Shown here: positions 9,717 through 64,000 of the stretch, one piece after another
How positions within the stretch are numbered: position 1 is the stretch's first letter
Layout of the letters: every line of letters starts with the position of its first letter
Source of the DNA: Haplodiscus bocki
Taxonomy: Eukaryota
Length of the DNA stretch: 64,000 nt
Direction of reading: 5' to 3'
NCBI GenBank assembly: GCA_965655095.1
Contig: OZ296653.1
Coordinates: 77,314,001-77,378,000, forward strand
Position numbers and translations under genes: made by a program
The notes under the pieces: model-generated
What the model was told of the DNA's origin: nothing
Seen by the model: only the letters and a program-made list of their open reading frames with translations
Database searches by the model: none

Positions 9717-9916
9717 NNNNNNNNNNNNNNNNNNNNNNNNNNNNNNNNNNNNNNNNNNNNNNNNNNNNNNNNNNNNNNNNNNNNNNNNNNNNNNNNNNNN
9801 NNNNNNNNNNNNNNNNNNNNNNNNNNNNNNNNNNNNNNNNNNNNNNNNNNNNNNNNNNNNNNNNNNNNNNNNNNNNNNNNNNNNNNNNNNNNNNNNNNNN
9901 NNNNNNNNNNNNNNNN
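9717..9916. other. Assembly gap (200 N)
   Basis: Run of exactly 200 N, a fixed-size scaffolding gap. Confidence 1.
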
Positions 9917-38213: not shown

Positions 38214-38697
38214 TAGGAAAGCGAAATCTTCCTTTCTACAGGAACGTTTTTTTCCCATCCGTTGTTTGCCAATTGCGTTCACGCCAAATCGGCAAGTTTG
38301 TTCACGTTTCTGGACGTGAATTTTTTTCTGAACGTGTAGCAAAATTGCCGTAGAATGCGCCTGCAATAGCAAGATTTCTCAAAACGTTCGAAATTTTGGT
38401 CTTTTGTGAGAGAATAGATGGGTTTTTGGAAAAAAAGGACGCGAATTTTTTCAAAATCACCAAAAGTGGCAAATTTGCTGTAAAATGCCTATCAATTGAT
38501 AATAATTCTTAAAAAATCTTGTCCCCCCTGATTCTGAAATTTTTTCTGGCATAAAATAAGAAGATTTTGAACATTGGAAAAGGTAGAAAATTTGATGGAT
38601 AAAGAATATTTTTCCCATAAAAAAATATTCTCTTTAAAAGCCTTCGTTACCAAATTGAAGAGGAGCATTTTATGCCGGTAGTAGCCAGTTGTCTTGT
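38214..38697 (+). mobile_element. Helentron/DINE-like non-autonomous element (5' boundary approximate)
   Basis: Ends TATGCCGGTAGTAGCCAGTTGTCTTGT, homologous to 7708-7733. Confidence 0.45.
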
Positions 38698-38759
38698 TTT
38701 CAATTTATTATATTAGTTACAGTGCTCAAGCGTATTCCTTGAGGAACAATTTGAGGTCC

Positions 38760-39700
38760 TTGTTTTGTTTTGATGAGTTGTTTGCAGTGCAGTCAGTGTC
38801 AATTGTATATTTGGGATGTCTGCATCTTCGACCTCAACCGAATACTTATTAACGTTGAGGGCATCACAAACACCGTTGTTAGTTTTTTTAATTGAGGGTG
38901 CTGATCTCTCAGCTGATTGTTGTGCTACCTTTAAATATTTCGGGCGGTTTTCACTTGCTGAAGACTTTTTAACAAAATTTATATCTTGGAGCTAAAATTA
39001 CTACTTTTCCATCAGTAGTTAAAGAATCTTTGACTGGCCTGAAACTTTTTTATTGGTATCAATAAATATCTCCTGTTTTTGGGAGACGGGAAAAAAGATG
39101 AAACAAACAAATCTAAACTTTTTTACTGCAAATATTTTGATATCATATACTTTTTTTTAGAAATTTTACGAAAAACAAAAATGCGGTATGCGACCTACTT
39201 TCTTTTCCTTTATTGGAAGGTTCAACAAGGTTGTCAATAAGTTTCTGTTTTAATGACCTATGACTAGTTTGTGTTCAATCAATTTATCCATCAATCATAG
39301 AAACATGATTTTAAGTCGCCATCTTCACTTGTTGTTAGTCTCAAGGTGAAAGAAGAATGACATACGTGTCTGATAATCCCTAAATCAGCCTCATTTGACG
39401 CTGCTATTATAAATTGCCTCACGAAATCAGCAAAAGGATTTTTACCTGGTTGGGTTTTAGTTGCATATGTGATATTACAATCATCGCCTCGTCTAACAGT
39501 TAAAATATGTTGAAGATAAGTAATATGGCATTGTATTGTATGGTTTTCTTCTCCATATCTAAAATTAACATTTTGAATGAGGTCGTTCATCTGAGCTATT
39601 TGTTGGTGAAATATTTTTACATAAATTCTTATTATTCTCAGTATTGATTTATTACACATATTTTCATCTCTTAGTTGAATATTTTCAAGACTCGTTCATG
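38760..39700 (-). pseudogene. Decayed Maverick/Polinton (adintovirus-like) double jelly-roll major capsid protein
   Basis: ORF 39291-39659 (KIFHQQIAQMNDLIQNVNFRYGE...YLQHILTVRR...LTTSEDGDLKSCF) continues in broken frames to 'SLKQKLIDNLVEPSNKGK' and 'PKYLKVAQQS...NNGVCDALNVNKYSVEVE'. The last fragment matches the P(R/K)Y(L/I).V..Q...N...FD..NV motif I recall from invertebrate Polinton MCPs. Confidence 0.55.
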
Positions 39701-45069: not shown

Positions 45070-47460
45070 GTTTGAGCGGAAATTTTGTGGACTGTTTTCT
45101 CAAACTGTAATTTTTGTGTCCTTTCTGGAAAAAAGTTCAGCGATGATCATTTTACGAAAATAAAACAGGAAAGGTTTCTTGAAGATATGTAGACTTTGAT
45201 GAAAAAGTTTCCGTTTTTGAACAAAAAACTTTCGGGAGCTTCGCCAAAAATTCTTTTTATGTATCAAGAGGAACATTTTGGGGAAATGTTTTTGAAAAGC
45301 TTTCAGTTTTTAATGGTTCATCCTGGGAGCCCTAATCAAGCAATTCTTAAAAGGAGATAAAATAACTCGTCAGGGTTGTCATAGCTGCATTCAACGTATC
45401 CAGAAGAATTTTTTGAGGAAAAATAGTTTTCCTGATTTTTCTTTTGGTTTTTTTTATTGTCGGACTTTGAGCTAAACTTTTCAAGATTTTTGGCAAAAAA
45501 TCTGGTAGGGTTGTCAAAAATGTGTTCTGCGTGCCCAGAGGAGTATGTTGAAGAAATATTTCTTTCGACAACTGATTTATCATTTTGTAAAACTTATTCA
45601 GATTTTGACAAAAAATCATTCAATAGGGTTGCCGAAAATGCATTCCAGACAACAATAGTAACAATTTGGAGAGGAAAAAAAACTTCATTACTTTTTGGAA
45701 ACCGGACCAAAACAGTTTCCAACTGTGACCAAAAATTTTTCAGCAAGGTTGTCATGATTGCATTCAACATACCATGAGGACCATTTTGAGAACAAAAGCG
45801 GTGAAAAGTAAGCATTAACTTTTTGGTGGTGTGAGTGAAACAATTTAGGACTTTATGGAAAAACATTCGGCTAGTTTGTCGAAACGCAATCTACTCATCT
45901 AGCAGAACATATTGGAAAATAGGAGAACAATTTTCAAAGTTCATAAAGATTTTCGAAATTTGAGCTGAAAAATTTGGCAATTTGAGCGATATATTACCGG
46001 TTGGTGTTTCCGAGCTGCATTTCATCTGTCCATTTTGGAAAGAAAAATTCCTGAAGAAGAACAGTTGGGGAAAAATTTTTGAGAAAAATTCAGGATTTTA
46101 CTCTTTCTCTGTTCTTCCGAGCGAAACTTTTGGGGATTTTTGGGGAAAACAATCAGCTAGTTTGTCAAAACTGCAATCAACTCATCCACAAGAATGTTTT
46201 GGGAGAATTGAGAAACAAAGTTCATACAGATTTTCAAAATTTGAGCAAAAATTTCTTGCTAGTGTTTTCAAACTGAACTCTACGTCTCCAGAGAAGGAAT
46301 TCGGGAAACAAATTTGGAAGAATAAACTCAAATTCTGATAATTTTTTCGACCTTCAGGAAAGTTTTTCCAACTCTGAGCAAAAACAGTGTGGCAGAATTG
46401 CTAAAACTACATTTTAGGTGTCAGGGAAAGTTTTTTGGGGAAAAAAATGATAAAATCACAATAGTTTTAGGAGTTTGACCGAAACTTTTTGGCTGGTTGT
46501 TCCAAGCTGCATTCCACTGTTCCAGAGGAACGTTTTGGAGAAAAAATTTCGAAAAATGGTACAACTCTGTAATTTTGTGAGAAACTATATCGAAATAGTT
46601 TCCAAGTTTCAGCTGTAAACTTTCAGCAGGGGGGTAGAGTATTCTCCTCGACCAAAAAAAACATTCAGCTGAAAATATTTTGAAAAAGCTCTATGTTTTC
46701 TCTAAGTATTTTTAGCGTTAAAACTTTTCGGACGTTTAGTGGTTTTTTTCGTAGGGTTGTCAAAACTGCCTTCTACATGTCGAGAGGGATAGTTTTTGCA
46801 GAAACTTTCTTGGAATCTGAGCGAAAAATCCTTGTCTGTTGTTTTCAAATCTGCATCCCACGTGCCCAGGTGCAACATGTTCGAAAAAAAATTAAGACAT
46901 GAGACTTTTCTTATTTTAAAAAATAGTGTGGGGATTGTAAACGGAAATCATTCGACAGCGTTGTCAAAACTGCATTCTACGTTTCCAAGGGGTAAATTTT
47001 TCGAAAATTGAAAAATATTTGTTTACCTCTTTTAACTTCAGCTTGAAATTTTCGGACTTCGAGCTGAAGTTTTCAGGAGAAATGTTAGAACTGCATTGTA
47101 CCTGTCAGGAAGAACCCTTTAGAAAATGTTTTCGAAATAGTCCTCATAAACTAATAATCTTTTGAGTGTTGCAGTGAATTATTATTCTACTCCGAAGAAA
47201 AAAGTATCGGTACGAGTGTCGAAGCTGCATTCTGGAGGAACTCTTTCAGAAAAACCTGAAAATGACTTAGAAAAGGCTTCGGAGTTTAAACGAGATGTTT
47301 TCGAATTTTGAGCAAAAACATCGTCAAGCTTTATTTGTGAAAAGTCCAGTCAAAAATTCGAGTGGAAGAAAAATAGGTTTCTAATACCCCTCTTCGGAAT
47401 TTGAGCGAAAAGTTTTCCTTCCCAGAGTTGAACAAAAAGTTTAGGGCAGAGTTATCGGAA
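45070..47460 (-). repeat. Long degenerate array of the ~110-130-bp repeat family
   Basis: More than 15 variants of GTTGTCAAAACTGCATTCTACGTGTCCAGAGGAAC. Confidence 0.8.
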
Positions 47461-48544
47461 TAGCATAGGATATTGCGGATAATACCAGTAGTCTCTCGCT
47501 ATCGCTCGCGCCACTGATATTATACGACAATATCCACGCTCGCTCGTCACTTCGTTCCTCTCCGGCTTCCTTCCAGTCAGCCTCTCGCTTATATTATTGC
47601 TCGGCTACACCTCACCTGTTTTTCCTGAACCATAAAAATGTAAGAAAGCGTGTATAAATAATTCAACATTTATGTGAACGAATTGAAAAGAGAAAAGTGC
47701 ACCTGCGTTTTACGTCCCACTAGACAAATGCACATAGACATTCCGATGAGCGTCGAATTTTTTTTACTTTTTTTAAAAAAAAATTTTTGACTCTTAATGG
47801 AATGTGGAATTTATGGAACAGGTCACTGAATTTTTGTTTTTGCTTGATTGAAAAAATGGTGACTACCACAAAGTTTTTCAAGGATATCTCCATGAAGACT
47901 TATCCCATTGAGTTAAAATAAAAACCGAAGTAAACCTAATTGAATTGAGAATTTTGTTTCGAGAAAAAATTTGAAAAAATTGAACTTACCAACTTACGAT
48001 GGCATAAAGTAGACTTACCATCTTACCATGGTATACTCAGAGCTTGTCGGTCTCAATCAAAATCGGGACATCACAGTTTAATTAGTCTACCCTGAAAGTT
48101 TCAGCTTCATATCTATCACAGTTTTTGAGAAAAACAATTTTGAAAAAGATCAATGGGTTAAACCTAATTAAAAACCAGTTAAGCGTAAACTTTTTTCATT
48201 TTCCCGCGCTATACACAGATCAAGAAGTCGTCGAATGTTTGGGCAAGCGAAAAGTATAATATAACATATAAAAGATCTTAAAACGTAGAATTCAACGATG
48301 ATTTTTTCGAAAACCTTAACGGAAACCTTACCATTGGAAAAGCCAAGAACCCTAAAACTAATCCCAAACATGGTATACGTCAATGAAAAATTTTGATAAT
48401 GATGACATATTATATATCGTTGAAAAGGTCTCTAGAAACGATATTCAACGGAAACTTTTTCAAAAACCTAAACTGGAACCTTAACATCCAAATAACCCAA
48501 TAACCCTGAATTTATGCCCTCAAACATGGTATGTCAATAAAAAT

Positions 48545-49018
48545 TTAAAATAATAGTGGAGGGATGTATTCTTGAAAAGGTAATTAAATTTAGAATTCAA
48601 TGCTGATATTTTCGAGCACATCAACTTATTTCTATACCTATCTATGTATTTTCTATTATTGGCGATTTTTAAGGAAAAATTTACTCCACACTAAAGGAAT
48701 AAAATTACATTTAATACAAGTGTTTAAAACATTTTCGGAAATACTTCCTTCTAGTAAAACTATCAATTTGTTTACCTTAATATATTCATATCTTCCTCGA
48801 GATGCTATTATTGTTTTCTTCATTCCACGATTAGTCGTAATATTTTTTGTTTTGTTTTTTGTTTTATCAAAAAATTTAATGTTTTTTTTAAATTCGATTT
48901 TTCCACAATGATAATCACCAATTTTTTTATTAAGCTCTACTATTGTGTAATTTTTATTATCGTTTATTTCATTTAATTTTGGATTTTAAAAAAAGTATTC
49001 ACTGGTAACTAGAATCAT
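48545..49018 (-). pseudogene. Cassette ORF C, unit 1 (disrupted)
   Basis: Homologous to ORF 61790-62245; starts MILVTSEY. Confidence 0.6.
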
Positions 49019-49109
49019 TTATGTATTTCATTTTCTTCGAAATAATTATCACATTCGAATTGATTAATCAGATTCAGTATTACTTTTCACAAATTGATCA
49101 AAACTATTT

Positions 49110-49365
49110 ATATATAAAACAATTTCTCGTAGAGTATCTGTTTTTTTTTCAAGACGTCTTGTAGTCCACGAACCGTAAATTTCACAAATAAATTATCAAC
49201 AAAACTCAAGACATCATTTAGTTTAGATTTTTAAAATCTTCGAATCCTTGAACCAATATTCTTTTAACACATCTCAAGTTTTCAAAATCATCCTCATTTA
49301 TTTTATCAGTAAAATCATGTTTGTTCAAAAAACACAGTACATCCTTTATTGTCTTCTTTTATATT
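49110..49365 (-). pseudogene. Cassette ORF E (~85 aa, unknown function), disrupted; second copy ~59390-59640
   Basis: The two copies give METIIDILCFLNKH.FTDK...DDFENLRCVK..LV..FED...SKL.D.LSFVDNLFV.F.V.GL.DVLKK. Confidence 0.5.
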
Positions 49366-49373
49366 GTAAAAAA

Positions 49374-49918
49374 TTAAGTATTTATGTGTCTAAAGCATTT
49401 TGGAAGCCAACTATAATCAAAATCCCCAAAGTCTTCTTCAAAAAAGTTTCTGACTAGTTTTCTACAAAGCATTGATTTTGGTTGATCCATATAATGATAA
49501 AATGTAATGTAATAAGGATCGGATATGAATAATATATTTATTTCATCAACTTCGTTGTTTATATTCCTACCAAATGTAACTAGAAAATCCAGAGGCGATA
49601 CTCTTACTACTATTATCAATTCAATCATGCTTGACTTAAAAAAATACGGTTTCTCTAGTATAATTGTGTTCGGAACAGAAATCTTACTCGAAAGCACATC
49701 ATTTTCTATCCACATAACACATACAGTAAAGAAATCAAGTTTTTTTTAATGATTATTATAGTATGGTTGAGTGATATCTATCAATTTATCAATTTCAGGG
49801 TTTCTTACAACATTTTTCTTGAAAATCAGAGTTGAAAAAAATATAAGTTTCTTTGTTAAACAATGTTTTTTTTGCTTGTGTTTTGTCCTTCAGATGGGCA
49901 TATATCACATTGTTCCAT
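49374..49918 (-). pseudogene. Cassette ORF D (CxxC..H finger-like N-terminus; putative paralog of ORFs A and C)
   Basis: MEQCDIC...(frameshift)KHCLTKK...RNPEIDKLIDITQPYYNNH*KKLDFFTVCVMW, continuing in frame into the computed ORF 49374-49715. Confidence 0.6.
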
Positions 49919-50346
49919 TTTTATTATAATGTTTTCATTTATATGTGTTTTTTGTTTCCAATATTTTTTTCTACTGGTTTTCATTTTTAAATTTATAATC
50001 ATAGTTGTTAATGTTGTACCCATTATATTTATCAGTTATTTGTGAATCACTTTTTGAATCAAAGTTTCATATCCTATTTTTGATTGATAATTGTAAGGTA
50101 ATCTGATATATCTATCTAACACATCATTTATTTTAATTCGTACTTTTAATTACATTTATAAAAACATTCTTTTATCAAATGAAGAAAAAAGAAATCAATA
50201 AAATTACTAAGATAATTGTACATAAGTACATTTAGTTGTACAAAGTCTGTTAAAGTCTTGTAAAACTACTCAAACAGTCAACTATAGTTTTACAAATCTC
50301 TTATTGTATGTTTTATGAAATATTTGAAGTAATTTTATTCAAAAAA

Positions 50347-50927
50347 TGGATTTTGAAAATCAAGAGTTTTTTTGTTCCGAAGCAGTTTTTTGTGATATAT
50401 GTGATAAATTAATTGAAATTAATTGGAATTTTAAACATTTGAAAGCTCTTTCATATGAAGAGTTTGATAGATTTAAACACATAAAATTGACTATTAAAAA
50501 TCCCGATATAAATTAAATAAATGACAGAATCGACACATATGTTTCAGAACATGATGAAAAATATGGATAATATCTTATCAAATATGATTTCAAACTAGTT
50601 TCTAACAATTATGAAGACTCACCACTCCTCGAATCAACATTATTCATAAGTGAAATAATATTTACTTGGAAAAGTTCTTTAGAAGACGTGATTAGTGATT
50701 ATAATAATAAAGGATACACTTTCAATCGTATAGATGAATTAAATGATAAAACAATAGCTGATAAGATGGATACGTCATATGATTTTTGTATTAAACACAA
50801 TATGCATGCTGTTGAATGGAAACTAATTGGTTTGATTAACAAAGATAATACAGTATTAAACAAACAAAACAGATCTTCGAGACTTCCTTTAATCAGAAAT
50901 TATTCTCGTATACCAATTAATAATTAA
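50347..50927 (+). pseudogene. Cassette ORF A, unit 1 (disrupted)
   Basis: ATGGATTTTGAAAATCAAG start; the C-terminal part is the computed ORF 50688-50927. Confidence 0.65.
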
Positions 50928-50930
50928 AAA

Positions 50931-51140
50931 ATGTATGTGACAAATATTAAATATGTTTATGATAATTTTACAAATGATTGTACAAACAATGAGAATAATA
51001 TTGATATAAATATACCAGCATTATTTACTACAAGTCCATGTGTTCTATCTTTTTTGAGCTTAACGAGGTTGATGGCGTACACATTAAATAAACCTTTATT
51101 AAAATTGAAATCATTTAAATTATTCATACAAGTGTATTAA
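50931..51140 (+). CDS. Cassette ORF B, small single-pass membrane protein (69 aa)
   Basis: N/D-rich N-terminus plus hydrophobic segment. Open in 5 of 6 units. Confidence 0.5.
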   Translation: MYVTNIKYVYDNFTNDCTNNENNIDINIPALFTTSPCVLSFLSLTRLMAYTLNKPLLKLKSFKLFIQVY

Positions 51141-51724
51141 TAATTAAAATTATTCGCACAAGTTCAAGGATAAATATGGTAAATTTCGTATTTGAATAGG
51201 TGTCATTATACATAAAATTTATATTCGAAAAGTATTTGTACAAATATAAGAATATTTCATATTCGAATAGGTGTAGTTATACTATATATCAACAGGTGAC
51301 AGTATACTATGTCGAAGATTACATTTTCTCCATACTCGTAAAATATGCTTTAATAAATAATGGTCAGTGATTTTTTGATTTTGCTTGGTTGAAAAAATGG
51401 TGACTACTACGTAGTTTTCCATGGATATCTCCATGAATACTTATCCGATTGAGTTCAAATAAAAACTGATGTAAACCTAATTGATATGAGAATTTCGTTT
51501 TCAAAAACTTAAACTGAAACCTTAACATCGAAATAACCCAATAACCCTGAATTTATGCCCTCAAACATGGTATGTCAAAAAAATTAAAAATAAAAGTGGA
51601 GGGATATATTCTTGAGAAGGTAATTAAATTTAGACTTCAAAGGTAATATTTTCGAGAACATCAACTTATCCTTATACCTAACTTTATATCCTCAATTAAT
51701 GGCGATATTTAAAAAAAAATTTCT

Positions 51725-52060
51725 TCATAATAATGTTATATTATTACATTTCATATAAGTGTTTATAAAATTTGTGGAAATACTTCCTTCTAATATAATT
51801 ATCAATTTGTTTACCTTAATATATTCATATCTTCCTTGAGATGCTATTATTGTTTTCTTTGTTCCACGTTTAGTCGTAATATTTTTTGTTTTGTTTTTTG
51901 TTTTATCAAAAAAGTTAATATTATATTTAAATTCGATAATTTTACAATGATTATCACCATATTTTTTATTAGGCTCTACTATTGTGTTTTTCATATTATC
52001 ATTTATTTCATTTAATTTCGGATTTAAAAAAAAAGTATTCACTAGTAACTATAAACATTT
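51725..52060 (-). pseudogene. Cassette ORF C, unit 2 (disrupted)
   Basis: Computed ORF 51725-52042 is homologous to 61790-62245. Confidence 0.6.
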
Positions 52061-52370
52061 TTTAATTTCATTTTCTTCGAAATAATTATCACATTGGAAT
52101 TGATCAATCAGATTCAGTATTACTTTTAACAAAATGTTTAAAACTAATTAAAACTTGAGGATCTGTTTTAATTACAATTATTAAAACAATCATTTATCAT
52201 ATGAAGAAAAGTGAGATCAATAAAATTACTAATATAATTGTACAGAAGTACATATATAATTGTACGAAGTTTGCTAAAGTCTTGTAAAACTACTCAATTA
52301 GTCAACTATAATTGTACAAATCTGTTAATGTATGTTTTTCAAATCATTTGAAGTAATCTTATTTGAACAA

Positions 52371-52952
52371 ATGGATCTTGAATATCAAGAATTTAATTTT
52401 TCCGACGCAGGTTTTTGTGATATGTTGGATAAATTAATTGAAATTATTTGGAACTTTAGTCATTTGAAAGCTCTTTCTTTTGAAGAGTTTGATAGAGTTA
52501 AACATATAAAATTGACCATTAAAAATCCTAATATATATAAAAAAAGGACAAAATCGACTCATATGTTTCAGAACATGATGAAAAAAATGAATAATATCTT
52601 ATCAAATATGATTTTAAACTAGTTTCTAACATTTATGAAGACTCACGACTCCTCAAATCAACATTACTTAACAGTAAATTATTGCCTTCTTGGAAAAGTT
52701 CTTTAGAAGACGTGATTAATGATTATAATAAAAAAAGATACACTTTCTGTCGTATAGATGAAATGAATATTATACTAATAGCTGAAAAGATGGATATGTC
52801 ATATCATTATGTATTAAACACAACATGCATGCTGTTGAATGGAAATTTTTAGTATGATTAACAAAGATAAAACATTATTAAACAAACAAAACAGGTCTTC
52901 GAGACATCCATTAATCAGAAAAAATTCTGATATACCATTTAATATATATTAA
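52371..52952 (+). pseudogene. Cassette ORF A, unit 2 (frameshifted)
   Basis: MDLEYQEFNFSDAGFCDMLDKLIE...; frameshift after KNPNI. Confidence 0.65.
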
Positions 52953-53159
52953 ATGTTTGTCACAAATAATAATGATGATTATGATAATTTCACAAATAAT
53001 TGTACAAACAATGAAAAAAATATTGATATAATTATACCAGCATTATTTATTACATTTCCATGTGGTCTATCCTTTTTATGCTTAATGAGTTTGATAACGT
53101 ACACAAAATTTAATCACTTTTTAAAATTCAAAAAACTCAATATGTTCATACAAGTGTAA
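52953..53159 (+). CDS. Cassette ORF B (68 aa)
   Basis: MFVTNNNDDY...IIIPALFITFPCGLSFLCLMSLITY (TM-like). Confidence 0.5.
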   Translation: MFVTNNNDDYDNFTNNCTNNEKNIDIIIPALFITFPCGLSFLCLMSLITYTKFNHFLKFKKLNMFIQV

Positions 53160-54886
53160 TAATAATCAAAATTATTCACACTAGTATAGGGATAAATATA
53201 TTAATCTTCGTATTGGAATAGGTGTTATACATAATATTTATATTCGAATTGACTTTGTACAAATATACGAATATTTCATCTTGGAATAGGTGTAATTATA
53301 CTATATATCAACAGGTGACAGTAGACTATATCAATTTTTACATTTTGTCCATACTCGTAAAATATGCTTTAAAAAAATGGTCAGTGAATTTTTGTTTTTG
53401 CTTGCTTGAAAAAACGGTGACTACCACATAGTTTTTCAAGGATACCTCCATGAATACGTATCCCTTTGAGTTCAAATAAAAACTATGTAAACCTAATTGA
53501 ATTAAGAATTTTGTTTCGAGAAAAAAGTTGAAAAAAATTGAACTTACCAACTTACGATGGCATAAACTAGACTTACCATCTTACCATGGTATACTCAGAG
53601 CTTGTCGGTCTCAATCAAAATCGGGACATCACAGTTTAATTAGTCTACCCTGAAAGTTCCAGCTTAATATCTATCATAGTTTTTGAGAAAAACAAATTTG
53701 AAAAAGATCAATGGGTTAAACCTAATTAAAAACCAGTCAAGCGTAAACTTTACTTTATTTTCCCGCGCTATGTACAGATCAAGAAAACAACGAGTGTTTG
53801 AGCTAGAGAAAAGCATATAATACCATATAAAAGGTCTTAAAAAGTAAATTTCAACGATGATGTTTTCGAAGACATTAACTGAAACCTTACTATTGAAAAA
53901 CCCAAAAACGCCAAAACTAATCCCAAACATGGTATACGTCAATGAAAAGCTTTTATTAATGATGACAAATTCTATATCGTTGAAAAGGTCTTAAAAAACG
54001 CTATTGAACGGAAAATTTCGAAAACTCAAACTGAAAACTTAACATCGAAAAAACCCAATAACCCTGAAATTATGCCCTCAAACATGGTATGTCAATAAAA
54101 AACCTTAAAATAAAAGTGGAGGGATATAATCGTGAGAAGGTAACTAAATTTAGACTTCAATGGTGATGTTTTCGAGAGCATCAACTTTATCTTATAGCTA
54201 TCTAATTATTCTCTATTATTGGCGATATTCAAGAAAAACTTTCTCCATATTAAAGTAATATTATTACATTTCATATAAGTGTTTATAAAACTTGTGGAAA
54301 TACTTCCTTCTATTAAAACTATCATTTTGTTTACCTTAATATTTTAATATGTTCCTTGAGATGCTATTATTGTTTTCTTTGTTCCTCGAATAGTCGTATT
54401 ATTTTTTGTTTTGTTTTTTGTTTTATCAAAAAACTTGATGTTATATTTAAATTCGATTTTTCTACAACTAATACCACCATAAATTTTATTAAGGTCTACT
54501 ATTGTGGTATTTATAATATGAAAATTTTCATTTAGTTTTGGATTTAGAAATGTATTCACTAGTGACTATAATCTTTTATATAGTTCATTTTCTTCGAAAG
54601 AATTATCACCTTCGCGTTTATTAATCCATTCAGTATTACTTTTAACAAAATGTTTAAAACTAATTGAAACTTGAGGATCTGTTTTAATTACATTTATTAA
54701 AACATCCATTTGTCATATGAAGAAAAATGAGATCAATAAAATTACTAATATAAATGTACAGAAGTACATATATAATTGTACGAAGTCTGATAAAATCTTG
54801 CAAAACTACTCAATTAGTCAACTTTAATTGTACAAACCTGTTAATGTATGTTTTATAAATCAGTTGAAGTAATTTTATTTAAATAA

Positions 54887-55472
54887 ATGGATCTTGAAAA
54901 TCAAGAAATTAATTTTTCCGAAGCAGGTTTTTGTGAAATATGTGATAAAATAATTGAAATTAATTGGAACTTTGGTCATTTGAAAGCTCTTTCATTTGAA
55001 GAGTTTGATAGGTAAAAACATACAAAATTGACTAATAAAAATCCTGATATAAATGAAAAAAGGACAAAAACGACTCATTTGTTTCAGAACATGATGGAAA
55101 TTGTGAATAATATCTTATCAAATATGATTTTCAACTAGTTTCTAACAATTAAGGAGACTCACCACTCCTCAAATCAACATTACTTAACAGTAAAAATTTG
55201 TTTTCTCGGAAAAGTTCTTTAGAAGACGTGTTTATTGATTATAATAATAAAAGATACACTTTCAGTCGTATAGATGAAATAAAAAATATAACATTAGCTG
55301 AAAAAATCGATATGTCGTATGATTCTTGTATTAAACACAATATGCATGCTGTTGAATGGAAACTTATTAGTATGATTAACAAAGATAAAACATTAATAAA
55401 AAGAAACGAAACAGGTTTTCGAGACATCCAATATTCAGAAAAATTTCTGATATACCATTTAGCAGTTATTAA
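54887..55472 (+). pseudogene. Cassette ORF A, unit 3 (stops and frameshifts)
   Basis: Homologous to 57709-58293; includes the computed ORF 55198-55482. Confidence 0.65.
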
Positions 55473-55679
55473 ATGTTTGTGACAAATAATACTGGTGATT
55501 ATGATAATTTCACAAATAATTGTACAAACAATGAAAAAAATATTGATATAATTATACCAGCATTATTTATTACATTTCCATGTGGTCTATCCTTTTTATG
55601 CTTAATGAGTTTGATAACGTACACAAAATTTAATCACTTTTTAAAATTCAAAAAACTCAATATGTTCATACAAGTGTAA
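55473..55679 (+). CDS. Cassette ORF B (68 aa)
   Basis: Differs from 52953-53159 at only two residues. Confidence 0.5.
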   Translation: MFVTNNTGDYDNFTNNCTNNEKNIDIIIPALFITFPCGLSFLCLMSLITYTKFNHFLKFKKLNMFIQV

Positions 55680-57708
55680 TAGCAATCACAATTATTCACA
55701 CAAGTATAAGGATAATTATATTAATCTTCGTATTGGAATAGGTGTTATACATAATACTTATATTCGAATAGTATTTGTACAATTATAAGAATATTTCCTT
55801 TTCGAATAGGTGTAATTATACTATAGATCAACAGAAGATAGTATTTTTTATCAAAAATTACATTTTCTCCGTAATCGTAAAATATGCTTTAATAAATAAT
55901 GGTCAGTGAATTTTTGTTTTTGCTCGGTTGAAAAAATAGTGACTACCACATAGTTTTTCGATGATGCCTCCATGAATACTTATCCGATTGAGTTCAAATA
56001 AAAACTGATCTAAACCTAAATGAATTGAAAATTTTGTTTCGAGGAAAAAAAATGAAAAAAGTTCAACTTACCATCTTACCATGGCATAAACTAGACTTAC
56101 CATCTTACCATGGTGTACTAAGAGCTTGTCCGTCTCAATCAAATTCGAAACAACATAGTTTAATTAGTCTACCTTTAAAGTTTGAGCTCCATATCTATCA
56201 TAGTTTTTGAGAAAAACAAATTTGAAATTTATCAAAGGGGTAAACCCAATTAAAAACCACCTAAGAGTGAACTATTTTATTTTCCCACGGTTTATACAGG
56301 TCAAGAATTCAACAAATAATTGAGCTAGAGAAAAGTATTTCAAGAAAAAAGTTGGAAAAAACCGAACTTACCAAATTACCATGGTATAAACTAGACTTAC
56401 CATCTTACCATGGTATACCCAGAGGTTGTCCGTCTCAATCAAAATCGAAACTTCATAGTTTATTTAGTCTACCTTGAAAGTTTCAGCTTCATATCTTTCT
56501 TAGTTTTTGAGAAAAACAAATTTGAAAAAGATCAAAGGGCTAAACCTAATTAAAAATCACTTAAGCGTAAACTTTTTTTTTAATTTTCCCACAGTATACA
56601 CAGATCAAGAAGTCAACGAATATTTGGGCTAGAGAAAAGTATAATATAACATATAAAAGATCTTAAAACGTAAAATTCAACGATGATATTTTCGAAAACC
56701 CTAACTGAAACATTTTCATTGGAAAACACAAAAACCCTAAAACTAACACCAAACATGGTATACGTCAATAGAAAAATTTGATAATGATGACATATTATAT
56801 ATCGTTGAAAAGGTCCTAAAAAACGCTATTAAATTGAAACTTTTTCATGAACTTAAACTGAAACCTTAACATCGAAACAACCCAATAACCCTGAATTTAT
56901 GCCCTCAAACATGGTATGTCAATAAAAAACTTAAAATAAAAGTGGAGGGATATATTCTTGAGAAGGTAATTAAATTTAGACTTCAATGGTGATATTTTCG
57001 AGAACATCAACTTTTTCCTATAGCTATCTCTTTTTTTTTATTGGCGATATTTAAGAAAAAGTTTCTCCATAAAAAAGTAATATTATTACATTTCATATAA
57101 ATGTTTATATTACTTGTGGAAATACTTCCTTCTATTAAAACTATCAATTTGTTTACCCTAATATATTAATATCCTCCTTGAGATGCTATTATTGTTTTCT
57201 TTGTTCCACGAATAGTCGTAATATTTTTTTTTGTTTTTTGTTTTATCAAAAAACTTAATGTTGTATTTAAAATCGATTTTTCTACAATGACTATCACCAT
57301 TTTTTTTATTAAGCTCTACTATTGTGTTATTTATAATATCATTTTTTTCATTTAGTTTTGGATTTAAAAATGTATTCACTAGTGACTATAATCTTTTATA
57401 TAGTTCATTTTTTTTCGAAATAATTATCACATTCGCATTTATTAATCAGATTCAGTATTACTTTTAACAAAAGGTTCAAAACTAATAACAAATTGAGGAT
57501 CTGTTTTATTTTCATTTATAAAAACATCTTTTTGTCATATGAAGGAAAATGACATCAATAAAATTACTATTATAATTGTACATAAGTACATATATAATTG
57601 TACAGAATCTGTCAAAATCTTGTAAAATTACTCAATGAGTCAACTAGAATTGTACAAATCTGTTATTGTTTATTTTAAAAAGCATTTGAAGTAATCCTAT
57701 TTAAATAA

Positions 57709-58293
57709 TTGGATTTTGAAAATCAAGAATTTATTTATTCCGAAGCAGTTTTTTGTGATACCTGTGATAAATTAAATGAGATTCATTGGAGTTTTAGTCA
57801 TTTGAAAGCTCTTTCATATGAAGAGTTTGATAAATTTAAACATATAAAATTGACTAGTAGAAATCCTGATGTAAATGAAATAAATGACAGAATCGACTCA
57901 TATGTTTCAGAACATGATGAAAAACATGAATGTTGTCTTATCAAATATGATTTTAAACTAGTTTCCAACAAATATGAAGACTCACGACTCCTCAAATCAA
58001 CATTACTTAACAGTAAATTATTGCCTTCTTGGAAAAGTTCTTTAGAAGACGTGATTAATGATTATAATAATAAAAGATACACTTTCAGTCGTATAGATGA
58101 AATAAATAATATAACAATAGCTGAAAAGATGGATATGTCATATGATTTTTGTATTAAACACAATATGCATGCTGCTGAATAGAAAGTAATTAGAATGATT
58201 AACAAAGATAATACACTAATAAACAAGCAAAACAGATCTTCGAGACATCCTTTAATCAGAAATTATTCTCCTATACCATTTATTATTCAATAA
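57709..58293 (+). pseudogene. Cassette ORF A, unit 4 (ATG>TTG start, TGG>TAG at 58180; otherwise open for ~194 codons)
   Basis: Computed 157-aa ORF. The frame continues past the TAG (KVIRMINKDNTLINKQNRSSRHPLIRNYSPIPFIIQ*), and units 1-3 have TGG at that position. Confidence 0.75.
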
Positions 58294-58476
58294 ATGGATG
58301 TGACAAATATTAATTATGATTATGATAAATTTACAAATGATTGTACAAACAATGAAAATAATATTGATATTTATATACCAGCATTTTTTACTACAACTCC
58401 ATGTGGTCTATCTTTTTTATGCTTAATGAGGTTGATGGCGTACACATTAATTAAACCTTTTTGGAAATTCAAATAA
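58294..58476 (+). CDS. Cassette ORF B (60 aa)
   Basis: Its ATG directly abuts the ORF A stop (TAAATG). Confidence 0.5.
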   Translation: MDVTNINYDYDKFTNDCTNNENNIDIYIPAFFTTTPCGLSFLCLMRLMAYTLIKPFWKFK

Positions 58477-60106
58477 TTCAAATTATTCATACAAGTGTAA
58501 TAATAATTAAAAGTTTTCACACAAGTTTAAGGATAGTTATATCAAAATTAATATTTGAATAGTTGTTTTTAAAAAATTTATTTATATTCGAACAGTATTT
58601 GTACAAGTGTAAGAACATTTCCTATTTGAATAGGTGATATTATACTATAGATCAACAGGTGATAGTAAATTATATCAAATATTACATTTTCTCCGTACTC
58701 GTAAGATATGCTTCAACAAATACTAGTCAGTGAATTTTTGTTTCTCCCTTGGTTGAAAAAATGGTGACTACTACACAGTTTTTCATGGATGTCTCCATGA
58801 ATACTTATTCCATTGAGTTCAAATAAAAACTGATGTAAACCTAATTGAATTGAGAATTTTGTTTCGAGAAAAAAGTTGAAAAAAGTTGAACTCACCATCT
58901 TACTATGGTATACTCAGAGCTTGTCCGTCTCAATCAAAATCAAAACATCATAGTTTAATTAGTCTACCCTGAAAGTTTCAGTTTCATATCTACCATAATT
59001 TTTGAGAAAAACAAAATTGAAAAAGATCAAAGGGTTAAACCTAACTGAAAACCACCTGCGAGTCAACTATTTTTTCCCACGGTATATACAGATCAAGAAA
59101 TCAACGAATATTTGAGCTACAGAAAAGTTATTTATACCATATAAACGGTCTTAAGACGTGGAATTGAACGATGATTTTTTCGAAAACATTAACTGAAACC
59201 TTACTATTTTTATTATGCTCTACTTTTGTGTTATTTTTAATATTATTTGTTTCATTTAATTTTGGATTCAACAAAATATTTTCAGTAGTAACTATAATCA
59301 TATATATTACTCATTTTCTTTGAAACAAATATCACATTCGAATTGATTAACCAGGTTCAGTATTACTTTTAACAAATGTTTAAAATTATTTAAATATAAA
59401 ATAATTTCTCTTCGCGTATGTTTTTTTCAAGACGTCTTCTAGTCCACCAACCATAAATGTCACAAATAAATTATCAACAAAACTTAAAATATCAGTTAGT
59501 TTAGATGTATTTTAATCTTCAAATTCTTCAACCAATCTTTTTTTAACACATCTCTAGTTTTCAAAATCATCATCATCTAATTTATCAGTAAAACAGTGTT
59601 TGTTCAAAAAACACAGTATATCAATTATTGTCTCCATTTATCTAGTAAAAAAATTGAGTATTTTTGTGTCTAAAGCATTTTGGAAGCCATTTATAATCAA
59701 AATCCCCAAAGTCTTCTCCAAAAAAATTTCTTACTATTTTTCTACAAAGCATTGATTCTGGTTGATCCATACAATGAAAAAATGTAATGTATTAAGTCCG
59801 GATTCATTTTCTTCGAAAAAGATATCACATTCGCATTTATTAATCAGATTCAGTATTACTTTTAATAAAAGGTTTAAAACTAATTCAAACTTGAGGATCT
59901 GTTTTAATTTCATTTATAAAAACATCCAATTGTCATATGAAGAAAAATGAGATCAATAAAATTACTAATATAATTGTACATAAGTACATATATAATTGTA
60001 CAAAATCTGTCAAAATCTTGTAAAATTACTCAATGAGTCAACTATAATTGTACAAATCTGTTATTGTTTTTTTTATAAATCATTTGAAGTAATCCTATTT
60101 TATTAA

Positions 60107-60691
60107 ATGGGTTTTGAAAATCAAGAATTTTTTTATTCCGAAGATGTTTTTTGTGATGCCTGTGATAAATTAAATGAGAATAATTGGAATTTTAGTCATT
60201 TGAAAGCTCTTTCATATGAATAGTTTGATAGATATAAACATATAAAACTGACTAGTAAAGATCCCGATATAAATGAAATAAATGACAGAATCGACTCATA
60301 TGTTTCAGAACATGATGAAAAAAATGGATAATATCTTATCAAATATGATTTCAAACTAGTTTCTAACAATTATGAAGACTCACCACTCCTCGAATCAACA
60401 TTATTCAACAGTGAATAAATATTTACTTGGAAAAGTTCTTTAGAAGACGTGATTAATGATTATAATAAAAAAAGATACACTTTCAGTCGTATAGATGAAA
60501 TAAATAATATAGCAATAGCTGAAAAGATGGATATGTCATATGATTTTTGTATTAAACACAATATGCATGCTGCTGAATAGAAAGTAATTAGTATGATTAA
60601 CAAAGATAATACACTAATAAACAAGCAAAACAGATCTTCGAGACATCCTTTAATCAGAAATTATTCTCCTATACCATTTATTATTCAATAA
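60107..60691 (+). pseudogene. Cassette ORF A, unit 5 (disrupted)
   Basis: ATGGGTTTTGAAAATCAAG start with in-frame stops. Confidence 0.65.
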
Positions 60692-60874
60692 ATGGATGTG
60701 ACAAATATTAATTATGATTATGATAAATTTACAAATGATTATACAAACAATGAAAATAATATTGATATTTATATACCAGCATTTTTTACTACAACTCCAT
60801 GTGGTCTATCTTTTTTATGCTTAATGAGGTTGATGGCGTACACATTAATTAAACCTTTTTGGAAATTCAAATAA
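60692..60874 (+). CDS. Cassette ORF B (60 aa)
   Basis: One residue different from 58294-58476. Confidence 0.5.
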   Translation: MDVTNINYDYDKFTNDYTNNENNIDIYIPAFFTTTPCGLSFLCLMRLMAYTLIKPFWKFK

Positions 60875-61789
60875 TTCAAATTATTGATACAAGTGTAATA
60901 ATAATTAAAAGTATTCACACAAGTTTAAGGATAGTTATATCAAAATTCATTTTTGAATAGTTGTTTTTAAAAAAGTTATTTATATTCGAATAGTATTTGT
61001 ACAAATATAAGAACATTTCTTATTTGAATAGGTGTAATTATACTATAGATCAACAGGTGATAGTAAATTATATCAAATACTACATTTTCTCCGTACTCGT
61101 AAGATATGCTTCAACAAATAACGGTCAGTGAATTTTTGTTTTTCCCTTGGTTGAAAAATTGGTGACTACTACACAGTTTTTCATGGATGTCTCCAAGAAT
61201 ACTTATTCCATTGAGTTCAAATAAAAACTGATATAAACCTAATTGAATTGAGAATTTTGTTTCGAGAAAAAAAGTTGAAAAAAGTTGAACTCACCATCTT
61301 ACCATGGTATACTCAGAGCTTGTCCGTCTCAATCAAAATCAAAACATCATAGTTTAATTAGCCTACCCTGAAAGTTTCAGCTTCATATCTATCATAATTT
61401 TTGAGAAAAACAAAATTGAAAAAGATCAAAGGGTTAAACCTAAATGAAAAGCACCTGAGAGTGAACTATTTCTTTCCCACGGTATATACAGATCAAGAAA
61501 TCAACGAATATTTGAGCTTAAGAAAAGTTATTTATACCATATAAAGGGTCTCAAAACGTGGAATTCAACGATGATTTTTTACGAAAACATTAACTGAAAC
61601 CTTACCATTGAGAAAACCAAAAACCCTAAAACTAACCCCAAACAAGGCATTTGTCAATTAAAATTTTTAACAATGATGACATATTATCTTAAACTTAAAC
61701 TGAAATCTTAACATCGAAAGAACCTAATAACCCTGAACTTATGCCCTCAAACATGGTAAGTCAAAAAAGTTTAAAATATAATTGGAGTG

Positions 61790-62245
61790 TTATATACTCT
61801 TGAAAAGGTAATTAAATTTAGAATTCAATGCTGATATTTTCGAGAACATCAACTTATTTCTATACCTATCTATGTATTCTCTAATATTGGCGATTTTTAG
61901 GAAAAATTTACTCCACAATAAAGTAATAAATATACATTTCATACAAGTGTTTAAAACATTTTCGGAAATACCTCCTTCTATTAAAAGTATCACTTTGTTT
62001 ACGTTAATATATTCATATCTTCCTTGAGATGCTATTATTGTTTTCTTTTCTCCACGATTAGTCGTGATGTTTTTTGTTGTGTTTTTTGTTTTATCAAAAA
62101 ATTTAATGTTATATTTAGTTTGGAGTTTTCTACAATGATTATCACCATAATTTTTATTATGCTCTACTATTGTGTTAATTTTAATATTATTTGTTTCATT
62201 TAATTTTGGATTCAACAAAATGTATTCACTAGTAACTATAATCAT
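61790..62245 (-). CDS. Cassette ORF C, best-preserved copy (151 aa, unknown function)
   Basis: Open ATG-to-stop frame. Disrupted homologs at ~48.5-49.0, 51.6-52.1, 54.1-54.6 and 56.9-57.4 kb, and a 5' fragment at 59.2-59.3 kb. Confidence 0.55.
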   Translation of the reverse strand: MIIVTSEYILLNPKLNETNNIKINTIVEHNKNYGDNHCRKLQTKYNIKFFDKTKNTTKNITTNRGEKKTIIASQGRYEYINVNKVILLIEGGISENVLNTCMKCIFITLLWSKFFLKIANIREYIDRYRNKLMFSKISALNSKFNYLFKSI

Positions 62246-62557
62246 TTATATTACTCATTTTCTTTGAAATAATTATCACATTCGAATTGATTAATCAAGT
62301 TCAGTATTACTTTTAACAAAAGGTTCAAAACTAATAACAAATTGAGGATCTGTTTTATTTTCATTTATAAAAACATCCTTTTGTCATATGAAGGAAAATG
62401 ACATCAATAAAGTTACTATTATATTTGTACATAAGTACATATATAATTGTACAGAATCTGTCAAAATCTTGTAAAATTACTCAATGAGTCAACTAGAATT
62501 GTACAAATCTGTTATTGTTTATTTTAAAAAGCATTTGAAGTAATCCTATTTAAATAA

Positions 62558-63142
62558 TTGGATTTTGAAAATCAAGAATTTATTTATTCCGAAGCAGTTT
62601 TTTGTGATACCTGTGATAAATTAAATGAGATTCATTGGAATTTTAGTCATTTGAAAGCTCTTTCATATGAAAAGTTTGATAAATTTAAACATATAAAATT
62701 GACTAGTAGAAATCCTGATGTAAATGAAATAAGTGACAGAATCGACTCATATGTTTCAGAAAATGATGAAAAACATGAATGTTGTCTTATCAAATATGAT
62801 TTTAAACTAGTTTCCAACAAATATGAAGACTCACGACTCCTCAAATCAACATTACTTAACAGTAAATTATTGCCTTCTTGGAAAAGTTCTTTAGAAGACG
62901 TGATTAATGATTATAATAATAAAAGATACACTTCCAGTCGTATAGATGAAATAAATAATATAACAACAGCTGAAAAGATGGATATGTCATATGATTTTTG
63001 TAATAAACACAATATGCATGCTGCTGAATAGAAGGTAATTAGTATGATTAACAAAGATAATACATTAATAAACAAGCAAAACAGATCTTCGAGACATCTT
63101 TTATTCAGAAATTATTCTCCTATACCATTTAATATTCAATAA
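62558..63142 (+). pseudogene. Cassette ORF A, unit 6 (same TTG start and TAG lesion as unit 4)
   Basis: Computed 157-aa ORF nearly identical to 57709-58182. Confidence 0.75.
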
Positions 63143-64000
63143 ATTGATGTGACAAATATTAATTATGATTATGATAAATGTACAAATGATTGTACAAACA
63201 ATGAAAATAATATTGATATTTATATACCAGCATTTTTTACTACAACTCCATGTGGTCTATCTTTTTTATGCTTAATGAGGTTGATGGCGTACACATTAAT
63301 TAAACCTTTTTGGAAATTCAAATAATTCAAATTATTGATACAAGTGTAATAATAATTAAAAGTATTCACACAAGTTTAAGGATAGTTATATCAAAATTCG
63401 TTTTTGAACAGTTGTTTTTAAAAAAGTTATTTATATTCGAATAGTATTTGTACAAATATAAGAACATTTCTTATTTGAATAGGTGTAATTATACTATAGA
63501 TCAACAGGTGATAGTAAATTATATCAAATACTACATTTTCTCCGTACTCGTAAGATATGCTTCAACAAATACCGGTCAGTGAATTTTTGTTTTTCCCTTG
63601 GTTGAAAAATTGGTGACTACTACACAGTTTTTCATGGATGTCTCCATGAATACTTATTCCATTGAGTTCAAATAAAAACTGATGTAAACCTAATTGAATT
63701 GAGAATTTTGTTTCGAGAAAAAAGTTGAAAAAAGTTGAACTCACCATCTTACTATGGTATACTCAGAGCTTGTCCGTCTCAATCAAAATCAAAACATCAT
63801 AGTTTAATTAGCCTACCCTGAAAGTTTCAGCTTCATATCTATCATAATTTTTGAGAAAAACAAAATTGAAAAAGATCAAAGGTTTAAACCTAAATGAAAA
63901 CCACCTGCGAGTGAACTCTTTTTTTCCCACGGTATATACAGATCAAGAAATCAACGAATATTTGAGCTACAGAAAAGTTATTTATACCATATAAACGGTC

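What the first reader, a model, noticed from the sequence alone, without database searches (positions are those of the whole stretch)
48545..50927. ORFs A, C and D look like three diverged paralogs of one uncharacterised protein family
Seen by manual alignment, N-terminal block: A 'RNPDVNEINDRIDSYVSEHDEKH', C 'LNPKLNETNNIKINTIVEHNKNY', D 'RNPEIDKLIDITQPYYNNH*KKL'. C-terminal block: A 'IDEINNITIAEKMDMSYDFCIKHNMHAVEWKL', D 'VDEINILFISDPYYITFYHYMDQPKSMLCRKL', C 'VNKVILLIEGGISENVLNTCMKCIFITLLWSKF'. A and D begin with CxxC-x(9-10)-H, a C2H2/matrin-like finger; C lacks it. Inference: an old duplicated family (finger plus ~140-aa novel domain) predates the recent tandem amplification, giving two tiers of expansion.
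Basis: partly seen in the sequence, partly recalled or inferred. Interest (0 to 1): 0.7.

Follow-up and report, generated by a model that had tools for sequence, protein, structure and literature searches.

The report
Decayed Maverick-like virus gene array
The three ORFs are broken copies of related genes (two zinc-finger paralogs and a fingerless cousin) from a Maverick/Polinton-like virus-like mobile element, a fragment of which was amplified into a dead tandem array; the family is real and unannotated, but the copies here are pseudogenes.

Summary
A and D belong to one family, an N-terminal C-x2-C-x11-H-x5-H finger plus a ~140-aa alpha/beta domain. Evidence: hhalign probability 88%, and a family HMM hits an intact D-type protein end to end at E 6e-10. 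C is a fingerless, more remote relative. Evidence: hhalign 75% at score 39 against nulls of 18 or less, and HMMER cross-hits down to E 7e-9 with every reversed decoy scoring worse.

The family has no Pfam, PDB or significant Foldseek match.

These are not host genes. In seven loci of the same assembly the family sits in a fixed module: C, E, then divergently ZnF gene(s), small ORF B, A32-type packaging ATPase, double-jelly-roll capsid gene, rve integrase. That is a Maverick/Polinton (adintovirus-like) element.

The window holds a ~25-kb AT-rich tandem array (47.8 kb to beyond the window end). Its 2.0-2.8 kb unit is the C-(D)-E|A-B fragment of such an element. Every A and D copy carries stops or frameshifts, as do the C copies, apart from three short N-terminal stubs and one ORF that has lost the family's C-terminal part.

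Biochemical function remains inferred.

The parts
47831..64000 (.). AT-rich (about 25% GC) tandem array with units of 2.0-2.8 kb. It continues to about window coordinate 73,000, outside the window.
   Evidence: Direct-repeat families with 2022-2823 bp spacing and 80-97% identity. GC drops at 48 kb. L003 extends the array by 9 kb.
48674..49015 (-). C copy of unit 0: the fingerless paralog, a pseudogene with an in-frame stop near the start.
   Evidence: tblastn with intact C-type P0015, 60% identity over residues 1-119, 1 stop.
49374..49918 (-). D copy: a finger-bearing paralog, a pseudogene. The start ATG and CxxC lie at 49918-49856; a frameshift follows, then one in-frame stop.
   Evidence: 74% identity to intact D-type P0173 over residues 16-181, 1 stop. 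The N-terminal 20 codons are in another frame.
49949..50146 (-). Fragment of small element ORF 'E', which in other element copies lies head-to-head with the first finger gene.
   Evidence: 67% and 61% identity to L001 5480-5779 and L005 9104-9382; synteny.
50346..50927 (+). A copy of unit 0: a finger-bearing paralog, full length (193 codons) but with 2 in-frame stops.
   Evidence: Translation. 56% identity to intact A-type P0006 over residues 1-193.
50931..51140 (+). Small ORF 'B' (58-69 aa, with a hydrophobic stretch), open in all six units. In other element copies it lies between the finger gene and the packaging ATPase.
   Evidence: ORF lists. tblastn to L001 7177-7386, L006 8386-8583 and L005 8165-8236.
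51674..52030 (-). C copy, unit 1 (2 stops).
52371..52937 (+). A copy, unit 1 (two frameshifts, 1 stop).
54209..54550 (-). C copy, unit 2 (1 stop).
54887..55398 (+). A copy, unit 2 (frameshift, 3 stops).
56992..57392 (-). C copy, unit 3 (frameshift, 2 stops).
57709..58275 (+). A copy, unit 3. TTG stands in place of ATG and there is a premature stop after codon 157.
59218..59298 (-). C stub, unit 4 (first 27 codons only).
59657..59791 (-). D fragment, unit 4 (last 44 codons).
60107..60673 (+). A copy, unit 4 (4 stops).
61790..62245 (-). C copy, unit 5: an open 151-aa ORF whose tail departs from the family after about residue 129.
62558..63124 (+). A copy, unit 5 (TTG start, premature stop after codon 157).
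39300..39689 (-). Isolated fragment of the element's double-jelly-roll-like capsid gene, 8 kb upstream of the array.
   Evidence: tblastn with L001 10041-10967 and L005 4388-4945, 30% identity, E 1e-10 to 1e-11. The L005 ORF has a weak DJR-like Pfam hit and its L008 relative a significant one.

Best explanation
The region is the first unit of a roughly 25-kb tandem array. The repeat unit is an internal fragment of a Maverick/Polinton-like (adintovirus-like) endogenous virus-like element.

Shown: The fragment carries C, (D) and E on one strand and A and B on the other. This is the gene order found in dispersed copies of the element, where A/D-type genes lie just upstream of small ORF B and an A32-type packaging ATPase. 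A double-jelly-roll capsid gene and an rve integrase follow further on.

Shown: A and D are two old paralogous lineages of one unannotated family. It has an N-terminal C-x2-C-x11-H-x5-H finger and a ~140-aa alpha/beta domain predicted as beta-alpha-beta-beta-alpha-beta followed by helices.

Shown at profile level: C is a fingerless, more distant member of the same family.

Shown: No copy in the window is intact: all A and D copies carry stops or frameshifts, and the C copies are broken, truncated or have lost the family's C-terminal part. The array is dead DNA, most simply produced by unequal crossing-over of a duplicated element fragment. Later deletions removed D from some units and most of C from others.

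Inferred only: In intact elements the family most likely encodes small nucleic-acid-binding accessory proteins. They would act with the packaging and morphogenesis genes or regulate the divergent promoter region between the C/E side and the ZnF/ATPase side.
For: Array.

Pseudogene state.

A-D homology:
- hhalign probability 88%, E 2.9e-6.
- An HMM built from hits to the A profile matches intact D-type P0173 over residues 4-160 at E 6e-10, finger included. Reciprocal A-HMM and D-HMM hits are at E 0.005-0.009 in a database of 2143 pieces.

C homology:
- hhalign probability 75%, score 39.4, against null maxima of 15.7 (column shuffles), 13.2 (reversed) and 18.2 (unrelated ORFs of the same genome).
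- The ZnF HMM hits C proteins at E 7e-9, 4e-6 and 2.5e-5, with the 11 best hits all real and the first reversed decoy at E 0.075. The C HMM places 25 real ZnF proteins above every reversed decoy, always in one register.
- AlphaFold models built from separate alignments give the same element order in the hhalign register: strand-helix-strand-strand-(helix or loop)-strand-helices.
- 9 of the top 50 BFVD neighbours are shared between the two models.

Element context:
- Pox_A32 ATPase in L001 and L005.
- rve integrase in L004 and L008.
- DJR-like domain PF21738 in L008 at E 3.2e-10.
- Conserved order across seven loci.
- B and E are conserved in other copies.

Copy numbers.
Against: - No protein-primed DNA polymerase B or adenain-like protease was seen in the seven loci. 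Only the larger ORFs were scanned, and the copies are fragmented.
- The window holds no ATPase or integrase, so its assignment rests on synteny with other contigs.
- No finger Pfam model reaches threshold.
- No significant structural neighbour exists: best PDB E 0.046 and best BFVD E 3e-3 with TM 0.28. The nucleic-acid-binding role is therefore inference from a finger-like motif, a generic ferredoxin-like topology and gene position.
- The C model has only moderate confidence (pLDDT 66) and lacks the second helix of the A model.
- D-profile vs C-profile alone is weak: probability 1-4%, score 20-23.
Confidence: 0.78

Rival explanations
1. A and D are homologous, but C is an unrelated neighbouring gene. 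On this view it only shares a short asparagine/lysine-rich motif (the N-P...E-H-N-K-K-Y block) by chance or convergence in a very AT-rich genome.
For: - Pairwise BLASTP of C against A or D is not significant.
- D-profile vs C-profile by hhalign gives probability 1-4%.
- With the first, shallower C alignment, the superfamily profile aligned only 37 columns at probability 21%.
- The C model lacks helix 2 of the A model and has pLDDT 66.
Against: - With a more diverse C alignment the match extends collinearly over 116 columns, at a score 15 SD above the shuffled nulls and twice the best of 86 real unrelated ORFs.
- HMMER cross-hits reach E 7e-9, and no reversed decoy outranks any of the 11 best real hits.
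- Secondary-structure elements correspond one to one in that register.
Confidence: 0.15
2. The resemblance among A, C and D is only compositional bias. The region is 25% GC and the proteins are rich in N, K, I, Y and F, so no real family exists.
For: Extreme AT content. Pairwise BLASTP E-values are only 0.002-0.007 for short segments.
Against: - Column-shuffled and reversed alignments, and 86 real ORF pieces of the same composition, never exceed score 18.2, against 39-45 observed.
- 330 library proteins match the A profile at E of 1e-3 or better.
- The family HMM covers an intact D protein end to end at E 6e-10.
Confidence: 0.03
3. The array is not inert. A tandem array of fragments of an active element could act as a small-RNA source (a piRNA/siRNA-type cluster) that silences the dispersed elements. 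Alternatively, small ORF B, which stays open in all six units, could still be expressed.
For: The array holds both strands of element genes in at least 10 units. B is open in all six window units although A is broken in all of them.
Against: No expression data are available. Differences between B copies run at about 4 non-synonymous to 1 synonymous, as expected without constraint. B is short, so six open copies could be chance.
Confidence: 0.1

Closest known systems
Maverick/Polinton elements and adintoviruses (PMC8502044; PMC8097293)
   Same: Multi-copy endogenous elements that combine a retrovirus-like rve integrase, an A32/FtsK-type packaging ATPase and a double-jelly-roll capsid gene. All three are found next to the family in other contigs of the same assembly.
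   Different: No polymerase B or adenain protease was found in the loci examined. The adintovirus paper lists accessory genes ('Adintoc' groups, 'Oncoid' proteins with paired CXXC) but nothing identifiable as this finger-plus-domain family. No paper in the library pairs adintovirus with C2H2.
U1-like / matrin-type / JAZ-type single C2H2 zinc fingers (Pfam zf-U1 PF06220 and relatives)
   Same: A single N-terminal C-x2-C-x11-H-x5-H motif in D-type and most diverse family members. The long spacing to the last His is typical of this finger class; that is established knowledge, not tested here.
   Different: No finger model reaches its threshold (zf-U1 E 0.34, zf-DBF E 0.079). The A lineage has lost the fourth ligand. 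The finger region of the model has pLDDT below 50.
C2H2-type domain protein of Drosophila-associated adintovirus 2 (UniProt A0A7D4VFN9)
   Same: It is the best Foldseek neighbour of the A model in the viral structure library, and it comes from the same kind of virus.
   Different: E 3e-3, TM 0.28, rmsd 17.6 A, 10% identity, and three times longer. This is a lead, not a match.
Satellite-like tandem arrays derived from fragments of transposable elements
   Same: Head-to-tail amplification of an internal element fragment, units 80-97% identical, all genes decayed, with unit variants created by deletions.
   Different: The unit is long (2.0-2.8 kb) and comes from a virus-like element rather than from a cut-and-paste or retro-element.

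Membership tests
One protein family comprising A, D and C | Significant profile-profile or profile-sequence similarity between A and D | tested here: met
   hhalign probability 88%, E 2.9e-6. The family HMM hits intact D-type P0173 at E 6e-10 over its full length.
One protein family comprising A, D and C | Significant similarity of C to A/D beyond composition | tested here: met
   hhalign score 39.4 against null maxima of 13-18. HMMER E 7e-9 with reversed decoys all worse. D vs C alone is weak.
One protein family comprising A, D and C | Same fold by superposition of structures | tested here: inconclusive
   Only secondary-structure order and shared Foldseek neighbours could be compared. The order matches except for helix 2, and 9 of the top 50 neighbours are shared. 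No superposition tool was available.
Maverick/Polinton (adintovirus-like) element | Retrovirus-like rve integrase | tested here: met
   PF00665 at E 5.9e-9 in L004. rve fragments in L007, L008 and L009. None in the window.
Maverick/Polinton (adintovirus-like) element | A32/FtsK-type packaging ATPase | tested here: met
   PF04665 at E 1.3e-8 in L005 and 3.6e-5 in L001, directly downstream of the family genes. None in the window.
Maverick/Polinton (adintovirus-like) element | Double-jelly-roll major capsid protein | tested here: met
   PF21738 at E 3.2e-10 (40 bits, cut-off 27) in L008. Relatives in L001 and L004-L009, and a fragment at window 39300-39689.
Maverick/Polinton (adintovirus-like) element | Protein-primed family B DNA polymerase | tested here: not met
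   No polymerase hit among the larger ORFs of seven loci. The copies are fragmented and only up to 20 kb per locus was read, so absence is not established.
Maverick/Polinton (adintovirus-like) element | Adenain-like cysteine protease; terminal inverted repeats and target-site duplication | not tested
   Element ends were not delimited, and no protease hit appeared in the ORFs scanned.
U1-like/matrin-type C2H2 zinc finger | Four ligands with C-x2-C-x(11-12)-H-x(5-6)-H spacing | tested here: met
   Met with 11/5 spacing in 7 D-type and 10 diverse members that have intact N-termini. Not met in the A lineage: 0 of 10 have the last His.
U1-like/matrin-type C2H2 zinc finger | Match to a curated finger model above threshold | tested here: not met
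   Best hits are zf-DBF E 0.079 and zf-U1 E 0.34.
U1-like/matrin-type C2H2 zinc finger | Zinc binding and nucleic-acid binding | not testable with these tools
   Needs purified protein.

The most novel reading that the evidence does not exclude
The finger-plus-alpha/beta-domain family, together with its fingerless paralog C, may be a previously undescribed conserved module of one lineage of Maverick/Polinton-like viruses. It is encoded immediately upstream of the packaging ATPase, in one to three diverged copies per genome. It could be the missing DNA-recognition partner of the packaging motor, or a protein bound to the genome ends. The extreme divergence of its paralogs could reflect an arms race with the host.
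Probability: 0.15. Interest if true: 0.6.

Novelty: new member of a known kind. Interest (0 to 1): 0.33.

Why it matters
Many accessory genes of Maverick/Polinton-like elements have no assigned function. This family has no Pfam model, no solved relative and no name in any source I could query. Yet it holds a fixed position next to the packaging ATPase and has radiated into finger-bearing and fingerless paralogs.

It is therefore a concrete, testable candidate for a DNA-handling or regulatory factor of these virus-like elements. For annotating this window the practical message is more modest: the 16 kb at its right end are a decayed repeat array, not a cluster of host genes.

Tried and rejected
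- Pfam on all window copies and on intact A-, C- and D-type relatives gave nothing above threshold.
- tRNA and Rfam scans of the window found nothing.
- Ten long ORFs from the left 40 kb of the window have no Pfam hits.
- A PDB sequence search with the superfamily profile found nothing.
- Foldseek of the A model against PDB found nothing significant. The weak neighbours are palm or ferredoxin-like domains of Y-family polymerases and Cas7-type proteins.
- Foldseek of both models against BFVD gave only weak hits.
- Scans of IMG/VR viral contigs for C- and D-type genes, and of JGI metagenomes for C, found no relatives.
- Pairwise BLASTP among A, C and D is too insensitive.
- Source names for 20 family representatives: none carries a name and all come from ENA metagenome assemblies.
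- Literature searches found no description of the family.
- Host identification was not achieved. An MRG-domain gene on a neighbouring contig is closer to animal MORF4L1 than to fungal Eaf3. That suggests an animal or close relative. The contig is not human-like (25-40% GC, Maverick-rich).
- From memory I recall similar unnamed proteins in cnidarian, aphid and glomeromycete genomes. This was not testable here and is only a lead.

Full report
**Observation**

The stated region holds three reading frames:
- C at 48674-49015 on the minus strand.
- D at 49374-49918 on the minus strand.
- A at 50346-50927 on the plus strand.

None of them is open:
- A has two in-frame stops.
- D has one stop and a frameshift that cuts off its first 15 residues, which carry the CxxC.
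- C has a stop ten codons in.

A comes from 57709-58182, completed from the 55198 copy, and C from 61790-62245. The local copies carry the same blocks with substitutions.

**The array**

From about 47.8 kb the GC content falls from about 36% to about 25%. The sequence becomes a tandem array with units of 2022-2823 bp that are 80-97% identical.

The window equals part of ENA assembly ERZ26859043, contig ctg83766, base for base. Reading that contig further shows the array running to about window coordinate 73,000, which makes roughly ten units.

Units come in several forms:
- Unit 0: full C, near-full D, a fragment of a small ORF E, then A and a small ORF B on the other strand.
- Units 1-3 and 5: C, A and B, without D.
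- Unit 4 and several units beyond the window: only the first 27 codons of C, then part or most of D, then A.

The simplest history is an ancestral unit C-D-E|A-B that was later trimmed by deletions. Every A and D copy carries stops, frameshifts or a lost start codon, and so does nearly every C copy. The exceptions are three 27-codon C stubs and one 'open' C (61790-62245) that has lost the family's C-terminal part.

**Relatives**

The word-index searches found only unnamed ENA proteins:
- 9 for A.
- 11 for C.
- 94 for D.

They include intact genes: A-type of 190-199 aa, D-type of about 181 aa and C-type of 167-219 aa.

The exhaustive profile search with the A alignment found 330 library proteins at E of 1e-3 or better, and 107 at 1e-10 or better. 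Twenty that I looked up carry no name. The six long-contig members I traced all lie in the same assembly. Two others lie on short contigs from three other assemblies.

**Are A, D and C one family?**

A and D: yes.
- hhalign of the two family alignments gives probability 88%, E 2.9e-6, over 116 columns.
- An HMM built from hits to the A profile matches intact D-type P0173 from residue 4 to 160, finger included, at E 6e-10.
- The A and D HMMs hit each other's intact members reciprocally.

C: probably yes.
- With a C alignment widened by divergent C-like genes from other loci, hhalign against the 67-sequence superfamily alignment gives probability 75%, E 2.5e-5 and score 39.4 over 116 columns.
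- Controls:

| Control | Score |
|---|---|
| 60 column shuffles | mean 9.8, sd 1.9, max 15.7 |
| Reversed alignment | 13.2 |
| 86 unrelated ORF pieces (100 aa or more) from the same genome | mean 10.8, max 18.2 |

- Plain HMMER agrees. The superfamily HMM hits C proteins at E 7e-9, 4e-6 and 2.5e-5, and the 11 best hits are all real before the first reversed decoy at E 0.075. The C HMM ranks 25 real finger proteins above all 255 reversed decoys, always in the same register.
- The weak points are D vs C alone (probability 1-4%) and the earlier, shallower C alignment (probability 21-40%).

**Structure**

The A-type model was built on P0006 with 67 sequences. It has pLDDT 77, about 90 over residues 41-140. 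It reads strand-helix-strand-strand-helix-strand followed by three short helices, which is a ferredoxin-like order. The finger region has low confidence.

The C-type model was built on P0018 with 16 sequences and has pLDDT 66. It reads strand-helix-strand-strand-loop-strand followed by helices.

In the hhalign register the elements correspond one to one, except for helix 2. The N-P motif sits at the strand 1/helix 1 junction in both models.

Neither model has a significant neighbour. The best PDB hit has E 0.046. The best BFVD hit has E 3e-3 and TM 0.28, and is a C2H2 protein of a Drosophila-associated adintovirus. Nine of the top 50 BFVD neighbours are shared by the two models. I could not superpose the models.

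**The finger**

D-type and diverse members have C-x2-C-x11-H-x5-H. The A lineage keeps C-x2-C-x11-H but has Tyr at the last position in all ten close relatives. C-type proteins start directly at strand 1 with no finger. No Pfam finger model reaches threshold.

**Context**

Seven loci from the same assembly show a recurring order:
- C and E on one strand.
- Divergently: one or two finger genes, small ORF B and a Pox_A32-type packaging ATPase.
- A few kb on: a double-jelly-roll-like capsid gene (PF21738, E 3.2e-10 in L008) and an rve integrase (PF00665, E 5.9e-9 in L004).

This is the gene set of Maverick/Polinton elements and adintoviruses (PMC8502044, PMC8097293). I saw no polymerase B or protease in the fragmented copies read.

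The window's array unit is the C-(D)-E|A-B stretch of such an element. A lone capsid-gene fragment lies at 39300-39689.

**Interpretation**

Shown:
- One family with old paralogs that co-occur inside single element copies.
- Proliferation of the element across the genome.
- A local tandem amplification of one fragment that has since decayed.

There are therefore three tiers, not two, and the first belongs to the element rather than to the host.

Inferred: in intact elements these small proteins bind nucleic acid and serve packaging, morphogenesis or regulation. The grounds are the finger-like motif, the generic alpha/beta fold and the position beside the ATPase. There is no direct evidence for this.

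I did not do so. The genes belong to a virus-like provirus of a probable animal host: an MRG gene on a neighbouring contig is closer to animal MORF4L1 than to fungal Eaf3. I used natural intact relatives and alignments instead. The N run at 9717-9916 was left untouched.

Noticed in passing
window 50931-51140, 52953-53159, 55473-55679, 58294-58476, 60692-60874, 63149-63325 (+): Small ORF B (58-69 aa, with a hydrophobic stretch) is open in all six units although A is broken in all six. It has relatives between the finger gene and the ATPase in L001, L005 and L006. Differences between copies look unconstrained, at about 4 non-synonymous to 1 synonymous.
   Followed up: partly
window 49949-50146 (-); L001 5480-5779; L005 9104-9382: Conserved small ORF E lies head-to-head with the first finger gene in element copies. 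In unit 0 its tail runs in frame into the start of D.
   Followed up: partly
window 38288-39689 (-): Isolated fragments resemble the element's double-jelly-roll-like capsid gene and two other element ORFs, 8-9 kb upstream of the array.
   Followed up: partly
window 45224-47100: A degenerate repeat of about 100-135 bp (10 copies, 60-71% identical) lies directly left of the array. The 42-46 kb stretch has a strong positive GC skew.
   Followed up: no
L005 7132-7917 (-): The 261-aa A32-type ATPase ORF carries, at its N-terminus, a match to the C-terminal half of the finger family (residues 33-113). This is either a fusion or read-through from a broken upstream finger gene.
   Followed up: no
window 1-64000 vs contig ctg83766 (131,083 bp): The record coordinates given for L002 and L003 would place window position 1 at contig position 147,582, which is beyond the contig end. 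The window also contains a 200-N gap at 9717-9916. The window may come from a scaffolded assembly of the same organism rather than from this contig. The gap was left untouched.
   Followed up: no
L010 (ERZ27276762) and L011 (ERZ23500084): An identical 192-aa family member (P0157) occurs in two unrelated metagenome assemblies. The family is therefore not confined to the window's assembly.
   Followed up: partly
L008 9557-9853 (-): In one element lineage the gene head-to-head with the finger gene is a 98-aa helix-turn-helix protein (HTH_24, E 1e-5).
   Followed up: no
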